From contig NC_079164.1 of assembly GCF_947568905.1 (NCBI RefSeq), positions 71,548,001-71,612,000 of the forward strand: a stretch of 64,000 nucleotides of DNA. The letters are read 5' to 3'. A program made the position numbers and the translations under genes. This document shows, in pieces, positions 55,061 to 64,000 of this stretch (position 1 is the stretch's first letter; every line of letters begins with the position of its first letter). Origin of the DNA: Ostrea edulis. Taxonomy: Eukaryota. The notes under the pieces are model-generated. The model was not told the DNA's origin, did no database searches, and was given only the letters and a program-made list of their open reading frames with translations.

Positions 55061-58016
55061 TTATCTACATTCCCCGTTGAATTCAGTGCATCTGCCCTTG
55101 GAACGTCCGTTAGCGGTATTTTCGTTGCTCATCTGTCCCATTTCCATGATGTCGCGGGTATTCCCAGAATTAAGTAATTCTAAGATGGACTGCAAATACT
55201 GGAGCTGATGTGGTGCTGCAATTGTATATGAATGATCATATTTAAAGTTCCAATTCCAACGTTTCCTTAAAAGATAAGGACAAAGCTTATGATCGATTGT
55301 AAACTCAGTATAATTATTTATATTCAGTGCTATCCAAATCCTTACCGAGGAACTGAGACATGAAATTTGCAATGTCGGCCGTATTTCCGCTCGTCACGTG
55401 GTTCTCCACTTGTTGAAAGTGCAACATGGCCGACTTGATGTAGTCCGTGTACATTTGGAGGATGACAGTAATGACGGGGGCGGCGTCTGTAGTCATGTAT
55501 GTGGGTAGGATTTTCTTTAGCCAAGCCTCTGTCTCAGTGAAGGGTTTGATTTCGGATAACCTGTTTCAAATATTAGCCATTTTCAATTCCGTTTTCAAAC
55601 ACATACAAACGTTACATTCGTAATATAGGAAGCTGGGTTTTTACTAGTGAATCAAGATATTTAGCATTGGAGAAAAATGTATCAAAAGGACGAAGTCAAA
55701 TTGTACACTTTCTGATTTACCTCTCTTGAAAACGGCTAACAACGTGTTGGTGGAATTCCCATAGATCATGCACACTCGGACATTGAAATACGAAGCCATT
55801 GTCCGTCAAAAGTAGATTCAGTTTCTCATCGAACATGACTGGTGTCCATTTATCATGCTCAGCTTTCCACATGAGCATTTTCATTTTTGCAAGGAATTCC
55901 ACAATATCTGAAAAAATATGAATAGTAAAACCACGCTTACTTAAATATACCTGTTTACAGCATGCAATAAGTAGCAAAGATTTACAAATACCATTAAGTT
56001 GGAAATATTCAATGTGTTCCATAATGTCCCCGTAGGCATGTCTATGCGCTGCCATAACAATTTTCTGGGCGACATTGTCCACAACGGTCGTATCCGCTAC
56101 CCACTTCTCCAAGACTTCCTTCACGCCATTGTTAATTTTCCAGTCACCCTCGGCCATTTCACGTACTTGGTTCTTGAAAACATCTAGATAAGGTTCAATG
56201 TATATGAAAGTACTTGTACAATTCGTTTTTGTGACAATACATAGCAAGATGACAAAAGCATGCCAACATTACAATTTTTCACTACGTATTAACTATTTCA
56301 TTTTAGGCAGACATAACTGAGGAATCAAATGAATATAATAGTGTTTATATTCAGAACTTGGTATTTTCTAATCAGGTGTTGAAAATAAAACATTTCAGCT
56401 CCTATTGTGTAGAGTGTTGAAACGCTGTGGTTGTCATTTTGTGGACTTATTTGCAAAGAAATCTATGCTTGGCTGAGAAATTTTAAACCACGAAATAGTT
56501 GCATGTTTTTGCATCTATTATTCACAAGATCAGAGTTAGCTTGTTACCGTCATGGGTTCTTTCCACGAAATATTGAAAAATCAAACGATGCAATATTTTT
56601 CATTTAACTGTAGTATCAAAGACGGACATTTAGAAGTACAATGTACCTATAACATTTCTTTCATACGAGTAACATTCACTTATAAAATTACAGCTGCTAA
56701 AATTTTGAGATTATATTTCGGTTTACGTCACAGGTCTAATATCAATTCTCTATATAGTTCTACTCACAGAAAATTATTTGGTTGACTCTCGTCGTTGCAC
56801 ACTGGAAATGGGCGTCCAAGAGCTCTCTGGCAACGTTAACAAAAGTCTGTTCTTTGAGCATCATTTGGTCAGCGTCGTTATACCACACATTCAGCATTGT
56901 AACAACATTACGTGGTGTTAACGGCATCTCCGCTGAAAATTCAAGGGATGTCAATGAAATGTTGAAATGTAATTGATCCTTGCAATATCATTTGAAAGCA
57001 TTCCATGAGAACTTGCTATTTTTTCAAACATACTTACATTTATATGGTCCACTTGGAAAGCTGCGGAAGTATGGTTTCAGGAGCTTTTCAATCATTTTGT
57101 TGAGATAATTGTATGTTGGAGAGTAGGGGTCAAGTTCTTTGTTATTGAGTGGTCTGGTGCCGGGGATAGCGAATTCTGGTGTAGACCCGCTCAGTGGTCC
57201 GATACCCCTCATGGAATACTCGGGCCTACTTCCATCAACTACATACTGTCTTAAGCTTGCTGCGAGTCTCTCTAGTTTGCCGACGATGACGCGTAGTTCA
57301 TCCTCAGAACTCACTGGCTTTGATAGCGAACCTGTGTGAAAATAGACGACAGTTGTAGTGAACAAAGAAATCTTCTGTACGGTATTCATGGGGCACGTTT
57401 GATTGGGAAGACTCGAGTAACTCTATAGAGTGATGCCTGAGCATGCGCAGAGGCTAGACTCCTTGAATGTGAATAAAACTGTTCTAGTGTTGTTTTGAAA
57501 ATCGTATCAATGGCAATTTATTTAAATGTGGTAGTTCATTTTAATACCGAAAACTTTTACATTTCTATTACATGAATCACATGTATCCTTTTTCATGGTA
57601 ATTTTGCTCTATATACCCAAAAAGTTATTTCACGTGTCAAACTCAATATTTCTCTTCATTCTCCGCCGTGTTGAACACTTTATGCTCCTGCTAAAGTCAG
57701 GAGTAAACTTTTCCAACCCGTGTTCAACACTAGTGTCATGAAATAACACTTTTTATTTGCAACTCTAGCAACTCGTGTAATTTCAGAGTTGTTCAATCAA
57801 ACGTGCCCAAAGAGACTAGCAATTACGTGCAACCCATTTTGTGCGTGTTCGAGTGGTATAAACAATTTCACTACAGCTCGAAAAGACTTGCCGATACATT
57901 TTAAATCTCAATTATTATTCACGATGGAAAAGTTAGACAAAAAGTCTTTCCATGAAAAAAAAACCCTTACCTTGCAAAACTACTAGCAAAACCACGAGGA
58001 CTTTCCAAAACTCCAT
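55061..58016 (-). CDS. Uncharacterised secreted protein, paralog A, 445 aa; exons 58016-57971, 57331-57038, 56932-56768, 56183-55721, 55560-55346, 55215-55061
   Basis: All GT-AG with consistent phases (1,1,1,2,1); 1338 nt, open. Starts MEFWKVLVVLLVVLQG-SLSKPVSSEDELRVIVGKLERLAASL (hydrophobic signal peptide on a phase-1 mini-exon). No family motif recognised. Confidence 0.8.
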
Positions 58017-58079
58017 GCTTTGTTTCTATGATGTGATGTCAGTGATACCGGTCGTCTCAAAGTAAACGCACTCACCCGC

Positions 58080-58130
58080 TCAGTCCTTTTATACCTACCC
58101 GACGTCTTGCTGTGTAACAATTGGCTGTTG
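58080..58130 (-). promoter_or_regulatory. TATA box (58093-58087) and CCAAT box of paralog A
   Basis: The minus strand reads AGCCAATTG...GACGTC...GGTATAAAAGG about 70 nt upstream of the ATG. It is conserved in paralog B. Confidence 0.7.
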
Positions 58131-61260: not shown

Positions 61261-61322
61261 CGGGTGAGTGCGTTTACTTTGAGACGACCGGTATCACTGA
61301 CATCACATCATAGAAACAAAGC

Positions 61323-64000
61323 ATGGAGTTTTGGAAAGTCCTCGTGGTTTTGCTAGTAGTTTTGCAAGGTAAGGGGTTTTTTTTTCATGGAAAGACTTTT
61401 TGTCTAACTTTTCCATCGTGAGTAATAATTGAGATTTAAAATGTATCGGCAAGTCTTTTCGAGCTGCAGTGAAACTGTTTATACCACTCGAACACGCACA
61501 AAATGGGTTGCACATAATTGCTAGTCTCTTTGGGCACGTTTGATTGAACAACTCGGAAGTTACACGAGTTGCTAGAGTTGCAAATATAAAGTGTATTTCA
61601 TGACACTAGTGTTGAACACGGGTTGGAAAAGTTTACTCCCGACAATAGCGGGAGCCTCAAGTGTTCAACACGGCGGAGAATGAAGAGAAATATTGAGTTT
61701 GACACGTGAAATAACTTTTGGGGATATATGGAAAGCTGAACTGTCTCCATATGGAGTGGGTGATATTTCCATACAAGGGGTGTTTAAAATTTGTTTCAAA
61801 ACAACTGATTCTTCTGCTCAATGGCTACAGTTTAGAATTTTACATAGAATCCTTCCTGTTGGATATTATTTGAAAAAAATTAATGTTAAAACAAATGACT
61901 GCTGTAGATTTTGTACAAGTAATGTGGAGACGATGACACATATTTTTGCTTCATGTGATAAAACCCAAACATTGTGGAGTGAGTTGAGTCTTCATATATA
62001 TAGAAAAACTTCAGAAAGAGTAGGTTTTAATGTGTCCAATATTATATTAGGTGAAAATCCACTAACTTTTAATAACAAAGTTATGAATTTTATAATTTTA
62101 TATGTTAAACAATACATCTTTACCTGTTTAATGCAGGATAAGGAACCAAACCTTGTTGGATTATTATGTCACTTAAAGTTAAAATATCATGTGGAAAAAT
62201 ATGCTGCAATTCAAAAACATAGAATGCACAGCTTTGATAAAATGTGGAAGATATTTTTGAATAATTTCTTTAATTTTTACATGTTTTTTTGTTATGCTTC
62301 AATACTGTACAGCAAGTGACCACAGGAGAGAATGAAATGTATGTATGATTGATTGTCCGTTTGTTTATTTGTCTGTGTGATTATATTGTATGTGTCAAAA
62401 AACAAATAAATTATAAAAAAAAACAAAAAAAACTTTTGGGAATATAGAGCAAAATTACCATGAAAAAGGATACATGTGATTCATGTAATAGAAATTAAAT
62501 ACTTCTCGGTATTAAAATGAACTACCACATTTAAATAAATTGCCATTGATACGATTTTCAAAACAACACTAGAACAACAGTTGTTTTATTCACATTCAAG
62601 GAGTCTAGCCTCTGCGCATGCTCAGGCATCACTCTATAGAGTTACTCGAGTCTTCCCAATCAAACGTGCCCCATGAATACCGTACAGAAGATTTCTTTGT
62701 TCACTACAACTGTCGTCTATTTTCACACAGGTTCGCTATCAAAGCCAGTGAGTTCCGAGGATGAACTACGCGTCATCGTCGGCAAACTAGAGAGACTCGC
62801 AGCAAGCTTAAGACAGTATGTAGTTGACGGAAGTAGGCCTGAATATTCCATGAGGGGTATCGGACCACTGAGCGGGTCTACACCAGAATTCACTATCCCC
62901 GGTAACAGACCACTCAATAACAAAGAACTTGACCCCTCCTCTCCAACATACAATTATCTGTACAAAATGATTGAAAAGCTCCTGAAACCATACTTCCGCA
63001 GCTTTCCAAGTGGACCATATAAATGTAAGTATGTTTGAAAAAATAGCCAAGTTCTCATGGAATGCTTTCAAATGATATTGCAAGGATCAATTACATTTCA
63101 ACATTTCATTGACATCCCTTGAATTTTCAGCGGAGATGCCGTTAACGCCACATAATGTTGTTACAATGCTGAATGTGTGGTATAACGACGCTGACCAGAT
63201 GATGCTCAAAGAACAGACTTTTGTTAACGTTGCCGGAGAGTTTTTGAATGCCCATTTCCAGTGTGCAACGACGAGAGTCAACCAAATAATTTTCTGTGAG
63301 TAGAACTATATATAGAGAATTGATATTAGACCTGTGACGTAAACCGAAATATAATCTCAAATTTTAGCAGCTGTAATTTTATAAGTGAATGTTACTCGTA
63401 TGAAAGAAATGTTATAGGTACATTGTACTTCTAAATGTCCGTCTTTGATACTACAGTTAAATGAAAAATACTGCATCGTTTGATTTTTCAATATTTCGTG
63501 GAAAGAACCCATGACGGTAACAAGCTAACTCTGATCTTGTGAATAATAGATGCAAAAACATGCAACTATTTCGTGGTTTAAAATTTCTCAGCCAAGCATA
63601 GATTTCTTTGCAAATAAGTCCACAAAATGACAACCACAGCGTTTCAACACTCTACACAATAGGAGCTGAAATGTTTTATTTTCAACACCTGATTAGAAAA
63701 TACCAAGTTCTGAATATAAACACTATTATATTCATTTGATTCCTCAGTTATGTCTGCCTAAAATGAAATAGTTAATACGTAGTGAAAAATTGTAATGTTG
63801 GCATGCTTTTGTCATCTTGCTATGTATTGTCACAAAAACGAATTGTACAAGTACTTTCATATACATTGAACCTTATCTAGATGTTTTCAAGAACCAAGTT
63901 CGTGAAATGGCCGAGGGTGACTGGAAAATTAACAATGGCGTGAAGGAAGTCTTGGAGAAGTGGGTAGCGGATACGACCGTTGTGGACAATGTCGCCCAGA
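61323..64000 (+). CDS. Uncharacterised secreted protein, paralog B (3'-incomplete); exons 61323-61368, 62731-63024, 63131-63295, 63881->64000
   Basis: Mirror image of paralog A with identical splice sites. Open through the window end; 8 amino-acid differences from A in exons 2-3. Confidence 0.8.
61723..62431 (+). mobile_element. 5'-truncated L1/Tx1-clade LINE insertion with poly(A) tail and TSD AACTTTTGGG
   Basis: Encodes an ORF2 C-terminus WLQFRILHRIL...CRFC..VETMTHIFASC..TQTLW (zf-RVT-type CCHC). 3' AATAAA plus A-tail at ~62405-62431; TSD at 61713-61722 and 62432-62441; absent from paralog A. Confidence 0.9.

What the first reader, a model, noticed from the sequence alone, without database searches (positions are those of the whole stretch)
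55061..64000. Unrecognised secreted ~50-kDa protein family, hidden by a signal-peptide mini-exon
The ORF track starts these genes at a false intronic ATG. The real start is a 46-nt exon (MEFWKVLVVLLVVLQ|G) behind a canonical CCAAT+TATA promoter, which is typical of strongly expressed tissue-specific secreted products. The 445-aa product looks largely helical, has 7 Cys, and shows no motif I recognise. Present in two intact copies, it is a candidate lineage-specific shell-matrix, mucus, gamete or defence protein. This is the best candidate for undescribed biology in the window.
Basis: partly seen in the sequence, partly recalled or inferred. Interest (0 to 1): 0.75.

Follow-up and report, generated by a model that had tools for sequence, protein, structure and literature searches.

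The report
Oyster-only secreted helical protein gene pair
The stretch holds two head-to-head copies of a real flat-oyster (Ostrea edulis) gene for a secreted, all-helical 417-residue protein of unknown function; the family is found only in true oysters, is already in RefSeq, and was published as a 41-copy expansion, probably with a wrong domain label.

Summary
Copy A (minus strand, 58016-55061) is a 7-exon gene. Copy B (plus strand, from 61323) is cut by the window end but is intact in the full locus.

The window is Ostrea edulis chromosome OX387704.1. Both proteins are already in NCBI/UniRef, with exactly this exon model. The family is orthogroup OG0001484 of Gundappa et al. 2022 (PMC9679249): 41 genes in O. 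edulis, 2 each in two Crassostrea species, none in 13 other bivalves. It was labelled "SAP domain / chromosomal organization" on one protein only. Here 32 members show no SAP hit, and all full-length ones carry the same signal-peptide-like N-terminus.

No Pfam, PDB-sequence or structural relative was found. The core model is good (pLDDT 83.5, pTM 0.80), the best Foldseek E-value is about 0.04, and the best VIA Z is 7.8. dN/dS between the two copies is 0.30. Function is still unknown. RNA contigs confirm the exon 6-7 splice here and the mini-exon join in a Crassostrea homologue.

The parts
58120..58124 (-). CCAAT box of copy A, -108 from the ATG
   Evidence: Identical in copies B, C and D, and present at a similar distance in Saccostrea echinata and Crassostrea angulata homologues.
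58086..58093 (-). TATAAAAG box of copy A, -77 from the ATG
   Evidence: TATAAAAGG is conserved in O. edulis paralogue P0001 and in the S. echinata P0004 locus.
57971..58016 (-). Exon 1 of copy A: a 46-nt coding mini-exon (Met1-Gln15 plus the first base of Gly16), which is most of the signal peptide
   Evidence: The 46-nt length and GT donor are conserved in three other loci.
57332..57970 (-). Intron 1 of copy A. It contains the false ATG at 57389 used by the mechanical ORF list
57038..57331 (-). Exon 2 of copy A (residues 16-114): signal-peptide cleavage region, conserved N-terminal helix, disordered Pro-rich linker
56768..56932 (-). Exon 3 of copy A (contains the invariant Cys158)
55992..56183 (-). 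Exon 4 of copy A
55908..55991 (-). Intron 4 of copy A: 84 nt, in frame, GT..AG.
55721..55907 (-). Exon 5 of copy A (contains the invariant Cys275-Pro276)
55346..55560 (-). Exon 6 of copy A
   Evidence: Its 3' boundary is confirmed by an RNA contig joint at 55346|55215.
55061..55215 (-). Exon 7 of copy A, with stop TAA at 55063-55061 and the C-terminal Cys409/Cys416 pair
54929..54934 (-). AATAAA polyadenylation signal of copy A. RNA contigs cover the 3' UTR down to at least 54950
58017..61322 (.). 3.3-kb spacer between the two divergent starts. Its outer parts belong to the inverted repeat and its centre is unique
61215..61253 (+). CCAAT (61215-61219) and TATAAAAG (61246-61253) of copy B
61323..61368 (+). 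Exon 1 of copy B, identical to that of copy A
61724..62425 (+). 5'-truncated non-LTR retrotransposon tail (zf-RVT, poly-A, target-site duplication) inserted in intron 1 of copy B only
62731..63024 (+). Exon 2 of copy B
63131..63295 (+). Exon 3 of copy B
63881..64000 (+). Start of exon 4 of copy B, cut by the window end. The rest of the gene lies outside the window and is intact in L003

Best explanation
The stretch holds two functional, divergently oriented paralogues of an Ostreidae-restricted gene family. The family is orthogroup OG0001484, and every member is annotated 'uncharacterized protein'.

Shown:
- Each gene has its own CCAAT/TATA core promoter and seven exons.
- The first exon is a conserved 46-nt mini-exon that encodes the hydrophobic N-terminus.
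- The product is a 417-aa precursor. It has a conserved amphipathic helix (about residues 25-46) and a disordered Pro-rich linker (about 47-82). A core of about 300 residues and 13 helices holds the two family-invariant cysteines, and a short tail holds two more.
- Both copies are intact and under purifying selection.
- The whole head-to-head pair is a duplication unit that occurs again 10 Mb away.

Inferred:
- The N-terminus is a cleaved signal peptide, cut after the conserved Ser17-Leu-Ser19. This would release a soluble extracellular protein of about 46 kDa, pI 5.8.
- Cys158 and Cys275 form a disulfide.

Mechanism (my best guess, weakly supported): the folded helical core binds a ligand or partner outside the cell, at the animal's interface with water, microbes or shell. 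The variable linker and tail tune where it sits; in Crassostrea and Saccostrea members the tail is an acidic tandem repeat. My odds are about 35% haemolymph or mucosal defence or binding protein, about 30% shell, extrapallial or mucus matrix component, and about 15% reproductive or brood-related, with the rest other. The published nuclear 'SAP domain' role is very unlikely. The confidence given applies to the shown and inferred anatomy, not to the functional guess.
For: Gene model:
- P0044 and P0051, the window's own proteins, are in NCBI/UniRef. They match the seven exon translations piece by piece.
- An RNA contig joins 55346 to 55215 exactly, with GT..AG on the minus strand.
- A Crassostrea transcript contig (L002) aligns to C. 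angulata genomic DNA (L006) in seven blocks, with the 5' UTR plus 46-nt exon 1 joined to exon 2.
- The 46-nt exon and its donor are conserved in three further loci.

Secretion:
- The only strongly hydrophobic 15-residue window is at the N-terminus (Kyte-Doolittle 2.0-2.6, against 1.3 or less elsewhere) in all eight members checked.
- M1, K5, L10, S17, L18, S19 and P21 are near-invariant across 32 members.

Orphan status:
- Only 20 hits among 1.84 billion representative proteins; every one with a source on record is from an oyster.
- Named relatives come only from Ostrea, Saccostrea and Crassostrea/Magallana.
- There is no Pfam family and no PDB sequence hit.
- There is no structural match above helical background, for the whole model or for the core model with pLDDT 83.5 and pTM 0.80.

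Functionality: dN/dS between A and B is 0.30, with 16 synonymous and 19 non-synonymous differences and no stops.

Expansion and literature:
- OG0001484 lists the same C. gigas accessions as my clusters. It has 41, 2 and 2 genes in the three oysters and 0 in 13 other bivalves.
- A second head-to-head pair lies at 81.6 Mb, and the whole 12.7-kb module is 94% identical to this one.

Tails: acidic tandem repeats occur in P0058 and P0002.
Against: - No signal-peptide predictor could be run. The cleavage site and the disulfide are inferences.
- No read or contig was obtained that joins 57971 to 57331 in this gene itself. The RNA run found is tiny, covers mainly the 3' end, and could come from a near-identical paralogue.
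- No tissue, developmental-stage or proteome evidence exists for any member, so the functional odds are guesses.
- The window's own proteins lack the acidic tail on which the matrix idea leans.
- dN/dS of 0.3 gives no sign of the strong diversifying selection often seen in defence or gamete proteins.
Confidence: 0.75

Rival explanations
1. Published reading: these are SAP-domain proteins involved in chromosomal organisation (Gundappa et al. 2022, on OG0001484).
For: Table S7 of PMC9679249 records IPR003034/PF02037 for the orthogroup, and the text repeats it.
Against: The same table shows the domain in only 1 protein of 45. hmmscan of 32 members at E up to 1 gives no SAP hit at all. All full-length members start with a hydrophobic signal-like N-terminus.
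Confidence: 0.03
2. Defence or host-microbe protein: a secreted haemolymph or mucosal binding protein or effector. Copy number would have grown in flat oysters under pathogen pressure.
For: It is secreted, taxon-restricted and about 20-fold expanded in one lineage. It has a TATA-type promoter, and recent palindromic duplications with conversion patches. Immune families dominate bivalve expansions (PMC9679249 discussion).
Against: dN/dS is about 0.3 with no sign of diversifying selection in the pairs tested. There is no similarity to any known immune domain or pore-former; the ClyA, XaxB and MakA rows have E 0.3-0.9 and TM about 0.1. There are no expression data.
Confidence: 0.3
3. Extracellular matrix component of shell, extrapallial fluid or mucus. 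The helical core would be an assembly or binding module, and the variable repeats would contact mineral or polymer.
For: Crassostrea and Saccostrea members carry Asp-rich tandem-repeat tails (SPDDLYPGGTG x8 in P0058, and the YPMDPDSGFGGYGTTGP type in P0002). P0031 has TPELPVH repeats in the linker. From general knowledge, such tails are typical of mollusc matrix proteins.
Against: The O. edulis members, including both window copies, have no acidic tail (pI 5.6-5.8). A large folded helical core is unusual for matrix proteins. No shell-proteome link was found.
Confidence: 0.25
4. Non-functional passengers: gene copies spread by a transposon or by segmental duplication, decaying or not translated.
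For: There are many dispersed, very similar copies, and the pair lies in a palindrome with repeats and a LINE insertion.
Against: Both copies keep all seven exons open with canonical splice sites, and dN/dS is 0.30. Promoter motifs are conserved over Ostrea-Saccostrea distances. RNA contigs cover the 3' end with a correct splice. Two-copy orthologues in Crassostrea are transcribed.
Confidence: 0.05

Closest known systems
Orthogroup OG0001484 of Gundappa et al. 2022 (PMC9679249). It includes RefSeq 'uncharacterized protein' entries such as C. gigas LOC105339706 (XP_011443715) and LOC117680372 (XP_034328108), and O. edulis LOC125671640
   Same: Direct homologues: 33-93% identity over the whole length. 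They share the seven-exon layout with a 46-nt first exon, the same signal-like N-terminus and the same two invariant cysteines.
   Different: The window's proteins belong to the Ostrea-expanded branch. They have no acidic repeat tail and instead end in a Cys-x6-Cys sequence. There are 41 copies, against 2 in each Crassostrea species.
SAP domain proteins (Pfam PF02037), the label given to the orthogroup in print
   Same: Nothing beyond one protein of the orthogroup carrying that hit in the published table.
   Different: No SAP match in 32 members. The N-terminus is signal-like, not that of a nuclear protein.
Acidic, repeat-bearing mollusc shell-matrix proteins (general knowledge, not tested by homology)
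   Same: They are secreted and lineage-restricted. Some Crassostrea and Saccostrea family members have Asp-rich tandem repeats.
   Different: This family has a large, well-folded 13-helix core. The window's copies lack the acidic tail. There is no proteomic evidence.
Secreted all-helical carrier proteins, such as the vitamin-D-binding protein / alpha-fetoprotein (albumin) domains that appear among the weak structural rows
   Same: All-alpha and extracellular. VIA Z 6.7-7.2 over 86-89 aligned residues.
   Different: Z is below the background for helical models. Only a quarter of the core is covered, and the albumin-type disulfide pattern is absent.

Membership tests
OG0001484 / oyster 'uncharacterized protein' family | Full-length sequence homology to the listed members (C. 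gigas XP_011443715, XP_034328108) | tested here: met
   A profile search finds the clusters holding these accessions at E 1e-117 to 1e-128. The same accessions are listed for OG0001484.
OG0001484 / oyster 'uncharacterized protein' family | Shared gene structure: 46-nt first coding exon, seven exons | tested here: met
SAP domain proteins (PF02037) | SAP motif scoring above Pfam's gathering threshold | tested here: not met
   No SAP hit even at E up to 1 in P0044, P0051 or 30 further members.
Classical secretory proteins | N-terminal signal peptide: a charged n-region, a hydrophobic h-region of 7-15 residues, and small residues at -3 and -1 | tested here: inconclusive
   By inspection the pattern fits: MEFWK, then VLVVLLVVL, then QGSLS followed by KP. 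It is conserved family-wide, and no other hydrophobic segment exists. No trained predictor (SignalP) was available.
Classical secretory proteins | Protein found outside the cell | not testable with these tools
   Needs proteomics or tagged expression.
Acidic shell-matrix proteins | Strongly acidic, Asp-rich low-complexity sequence | tested here: not met
   Mature P0044 has pI 5.82 and no repeat tail. The feature is met only in the Crassostrea and Saccostrea paralogues P0058, P0002 and P0042.
Acidic shell-matrix proteins | Presence in shell proteomes or mantle-specific expression | not tested
   No paper in the library mentions any of about 25 accessions or LOC ids of the family. Supplementary tables of proteome papers were not searched.
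Alpha-helical pore-forming toxins (ClyA / XaxB / MakA) | Significant fold similarity to the elongated helical bundle with its tongue or head | tested here: not met
   These appear only as rows with E 0.26-0.94, TM 0.09-0.14 and rmsd above 25 A.

The most novel reading that the evidence does not exclude
The 300-residue helical core is a new extracellular fold that arose in the oyster lineage. Its 20-fold amplification in flat oysters, by copying head-to-head gene pairs, serves an Ostrea-specific trait such as mantle-cavity brooding or the interaction with Bonamia. It would then be a tractable example of a young orphan family acquiring an important function.
Probability: 0.25. Interest if true: 0.6.

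Novelty: already known. Interest (0 to 1): 0.35.

Why it matters
The genes and the family are already catalogued, so nothing new is discovered at the level of existence. Three points are useful for anyone working on oyster genomics.

First, one of the most extreme gene-family expansions reported for the European flat oyster (41 genes against 2) carries a misleading 'SAP domain / chromosomal organization' label. The proteins have signal-peptide-like N-termini, so they are probably secreted, and have a helical core with no detectable relative in Pfam or the PDB.

Second, the expansion unit is a palindromic head-to-head gene pair.

Third, a confident structural model now exists for the core. O. 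edulis is a restoration and aquaculture species limited by disease. A large oyster-only family of probably secreted proteins is therefore a reasonable target for expression and proteomic follow-up.

Tried and rejected
- Pfam on each exon, on full-length proteins and on 32 members gave nothing consistent. The best hit was SEA at E 0.015 over 34 residues, below its cut-off.
- The word-index search with the 153-aa exon 4 / intron / exon 5 piece was blank because of its length filter.
- A PDB sequence-profile search gave a best E of 0.08.
- Foldseek against PDB, on the whole and the core model, gave best E values of 0.038 and 0.052 with TM 0.24 or less on the query's length (0.33 on the target's).
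- VIA-align against 48,161 chains gave best Z values of 7.8 and 7.6, below the helical background.
- Foldseek against viral structures, run to test an oyster-herpesvirus link, gave nothing; best E was 0.085.
- Literature searches for about 25 accession and LOC ids and four SRR ids found only the genome paper.
- The scan's own notes, searched by sequence and by words, were blank.
- Three of the four sequencing runs laid were genomic DNA, since they cover the introns. They say nothing about splicing.
- The pseudogene reading was rejected on intact frames and dN/dS of 0.30.
- 'Exons diverge more than introns' as a sign of positive selection was rejected. Divergence is patchy: introns 2-4 differ by 0-1%, intron 1 by about 5% and intron 5 by 13%. 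That pattern fits gene-conversion tracts.

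
Full report
**What is in the sequence**

The region is a palindrome. Inverted-repeat arms of 94-100% identity run outward from a 3.3-kb spacer. Each arm carries one gene, and the two genes point away from each other.

I read the minus strand from 58400 to 54900 and located the splice motifs. This gives a seven-exon model for copy A:

| Exon | Coordinates |
|---|---|
| E1 | 58016-57971 |
| E2 | 57331-57038 |
| E3 | 56932-56768 |
| E4 | 56183-55992 |
| E5 | 55907-55721 |
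| E6 | 55560-55346 |
| E7 | 55215-55061 |

All introns are GT..AG. The exons sum to 1254 nt, which is 417 codons plus the stop.

Those figures come from reading through the in-frame 84-nt intron 55991-55908, which adds 28 residues and 3 Cys.

**The gene model is already public**

- The all-against-all HMMER search used the contiguous piece window:55723-56181 (exon 4, intron, exon 5). It found only 20 proteins among 1.84 billion representatives. Every full-length hit matched in two stretches, 1-62 and about 90-153, and skipped the intron-encoded residues.
- Following the best hit led to 22 clusters of Ostrea edulis 'uncharacterized protein LOC...' entries.
- Inside the closest cluster are two 417-aa NCBI/UniRef proteins listed without accession or name, which is how the tool lists proteins that the window itself encodes.
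- P0044 contains my seven exon translations in order, separated by single residues G, S, Y, D, R and A, exactly as the split codons predict. P0051 does the same for the part of copy B inside the window.
- P0044 sits on O. edulis chromosome OX387704.1 (GCA_947568905.1) near 71.60 Mb, and its CDS span of 2956 nt equals 58016-55061.
- Copy B is cut at 64000 inside exon 4 but is complete in the full locus L003. Its extra length comes from a 5'-truncated non-LTR retrotransposon tail (zf-RVT, poly-A, target-site duplication) in intron 1.

**RNA evidence**

Only one call each of the run finder and the read layer was allowed.

- Three of the four runs laid are genomic DNA, because their contigs cross the introns.
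- The fourth is a very small RNA library labelled 'mollusc metagenome'. It has contigs over the 3' UTR and exon 7. One contig joins 55215 to 55346, skipping 130 nt with CT..AC ends on the plus strand. That is exactly intron 6 of my model.
- It is shown for a homologue. A 1485-nt Logan transcript contig (L002; uninterrupted 445-aa ORF starting MESLKFVVVLLAVFHGSLSRP...) aligns to C. angulata genomic DNA (L006) in seven blocks. The first block is the 5' UTR plus the 46-nt exon, and it is joined to exon 2.
- Three further transcript contigs hold an uninterrupted ORF of a Crassostrea member.
- The 46-nt length and the GT donor of exon 1 are conserved in an O. edulis paralogue of about 63% identity, in C. 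angulata and in Saccostrea echinata.
- So is the core promoter. CCAAT is followed about 26 nt later by TATAAAAGG in Ostrea and Saccostrea. The TATA box is degenerate in the Crassostrea gene.

**The protein**

- The only strongly hydrophobic 15-residue window is at the N-terminus in all eight members checked.
- M1, K5, L10, S17, L18, S19 and P21 are nearly invariant in a 32-member alignment.
- This fits a cleaved signal peptide ending ...GSLS followed by KP. That is an inference, because no predictor was available.
- The mature protein would be about 46 kDa with pI 5.8 and no N-glycosylation sequon.
- AlphaFold2 on the family alignment gives an amphipathic helix at about residues 25-46, a disordered linker at about 47-82, a 13-helix core and a disordered tail (pLDDT 70, pTM 0.65).
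- The core alone (residues 83-386) models well, with pLDDT 83.5 and pTM 0.80.
- Cys158 and Cys275 are invariant in the family, so a disulfide is likely but not shown. Cys409 and Cys416 are specific to the Ostrea branch.

**No known relative**

- Pfam finds nothing on the exons, on full-length proteins or consistently across 32 members.
- A profile search of PDB sequences has a best E of 0.08.
- Foldseek against PDB has best E values of 0.038 (whole model) and 0.052 (core). TM-scores are 0.24 or less on the query's length, and the hits are mostly designed helical bundles.
- VIA-align against 48,161 representative chains has best Z values of 7.8 and 7.6. The tool's own calibration says helical models reach about 14 by chance.
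- The viral structure library gives nothing either.
- AlphaFold DB and HHpred were not available, so 'new fold' is not established.

**Distribution and literature**

- Named relatives come only from O. edulis, Saccostrea echinata, S. cucullata, Crassostrea angulata and Magallana gigas. The remaining relatives are unnamed assembly sequences, four of them complete transcript contigs.
- Gundappa et al. [quoted passage not shown] - Their Table S7 lists XP_011443715.1 and XP_034328108.1 for this orthogroup. These are the C. gigas accessions of my clusters, so this is the same family.
- The table records zero genes in 13 other bivalves and shows the SAP annotation in a single protein.
- My scans find no SAP hit in 32 members, and the proteins carry signal-like N-termini. 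The printed functional hint is therefore very probably an artefact of taking the top annotation per orthogroup.
- No other paper in the library mentions any of about 25 identifiers of the family.

**Evolution of the locus**

- Copies A and B differ at 19 residues.
- Nei-Gojobori counts over the full codons of all exons give 16 synonymous and 19 non-synonymous differences: dS 0.066, dN 0.020, ratio 0.30. This indicates purifying selection on both copies.
- Divergence along the arms is patchy. Introns 2-4 differ by 0-1%, exons 2-3 by 3.4-4.9%, intron 1 by about 5% and intron 5 by 13%. This fits gene-conversion tracts better than exon-specific selection.
- A second head-to-head pair lies 10 Mb away at 81.6 Mb (L004; products of 421 and 422 aa). 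The whole module of about 12.7 kb is 94% identical to this one, and its two arms are identical over exons 3-7.
- Consecutive gene numbers in the published member list fit many such pairs.
- In C. angulata the two genes lie in tandem, in the same orientation.

**What it most likely does**

- Shown: two intact, selectively constrained genes; RNA contigs that match copy A or a near-identical paralogue; a family restricted to oysters; a folded helical core; and variable linker and tail regions.
- Inferred: secretion, signal-peptide cleavage and the disulfide.
- Function is open. I commit to an extracellular binding or scaffold role at the animal's interface with its surroundings. My rough odds are 35% defence or haemolymph/mucosal binding, 30% shell, extrapallial or mucus matrix, and 15% reproduction or brooding, with the rest other.
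- The matrix idea rests on the acidic tandem-repeat tails of Crassostrea and Saccostrea members, which the window's proteins lack.
- The defence idea rests on the lineage-specific expansion, without support from dN/dS.

**Verdict**

The interpretation as an 'unrecognised, hidden' family does not hold, because RefSeq and a 2022 genome paper already have it. What remains is an uncharacterised, probably secreted orphan family with a doubtful published label.

Full-length work used the database's own P0044.
- The N run at 26160-26292 was left alone.

Noticed in passing
window 61724-62425 (intron 1 of copy B): About 700 bp of a 5'-truncated non-LTR retrotransposon is present only in copy B. Its ORF at 61693-62319 hits zf-RVT at E 4e-8. 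It has a poly-A tail and a duplicated ACTTTTGGG.ATATA target site.
   Followed up: partly
L004 (OX387704.1, 81.62-81.64 Mb) against L003: A second head-to-head pair of the same family lies 10 Mb away. The whole module of about 12.7 kb is 94% identical to the window's. Its own two arms have zero differences over exons 3-7, which suggests very recent duplication or conversion.
   Followed up: partly
window 55346-57970 against 61369-64000, and L003: Arm-to-arm divergence is mosaic. Introns 2-4 differ by 0-1%, exons 2-3 by 3.4-4.9%, intron 1 by about 5% and intron 5 by 13%, with indels in introns 5 and 6. This looks like gene-conversion tracts in a palindrome.
   Followed up: partly
L004 6633-6678 (minus strand): Exon 1 of the fourth copy has one extra T (47 nt instead of 46), yet RefSeq gives it a 421-aa product. 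The model may use another donor (GCTAGTAG|GTGTGC), or the copy may be damaged.
   Followed up: no
window 58330-58352 and 60990-61008: Long G runs (about 20 nt) sit symmetrically in both arms, about 320 nt upstream of each ATG.
   Followed up: no
proteins P0058, P0002, P0031 (relatives, not in the window): Family members carry different tandem repeats. C. angulata P0058 has SPDDLYPGGTG x8 in the tail. S. echinata P0002 has YPMDPDSGFGGYGTTGP-type repeats in the tail. O. edulis P0031 has TPELPVH repeats in the N-terminal linker.
   Followed up: partly
window 54950-55216, RNA run X3: Contig depth in the small RNA library falls from about 447 over the 3' UTR to 12 at the exon 6/7 joint and to near 0 upstream. 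This may reflect a 3'-tag library. The tool warns that contig depth is a poor measure, so I draw no conclusion about expression level.
   Followed up: no
   Followed up: no
L003 19889-23654 (outside the window, beyond copy B): The next called gene downstream of copy B has an NTF2 domain. In L004 the neighbouring gene has weak Kazal hits. The flanks of the two palindromes therefore differ.
   Followed up: no
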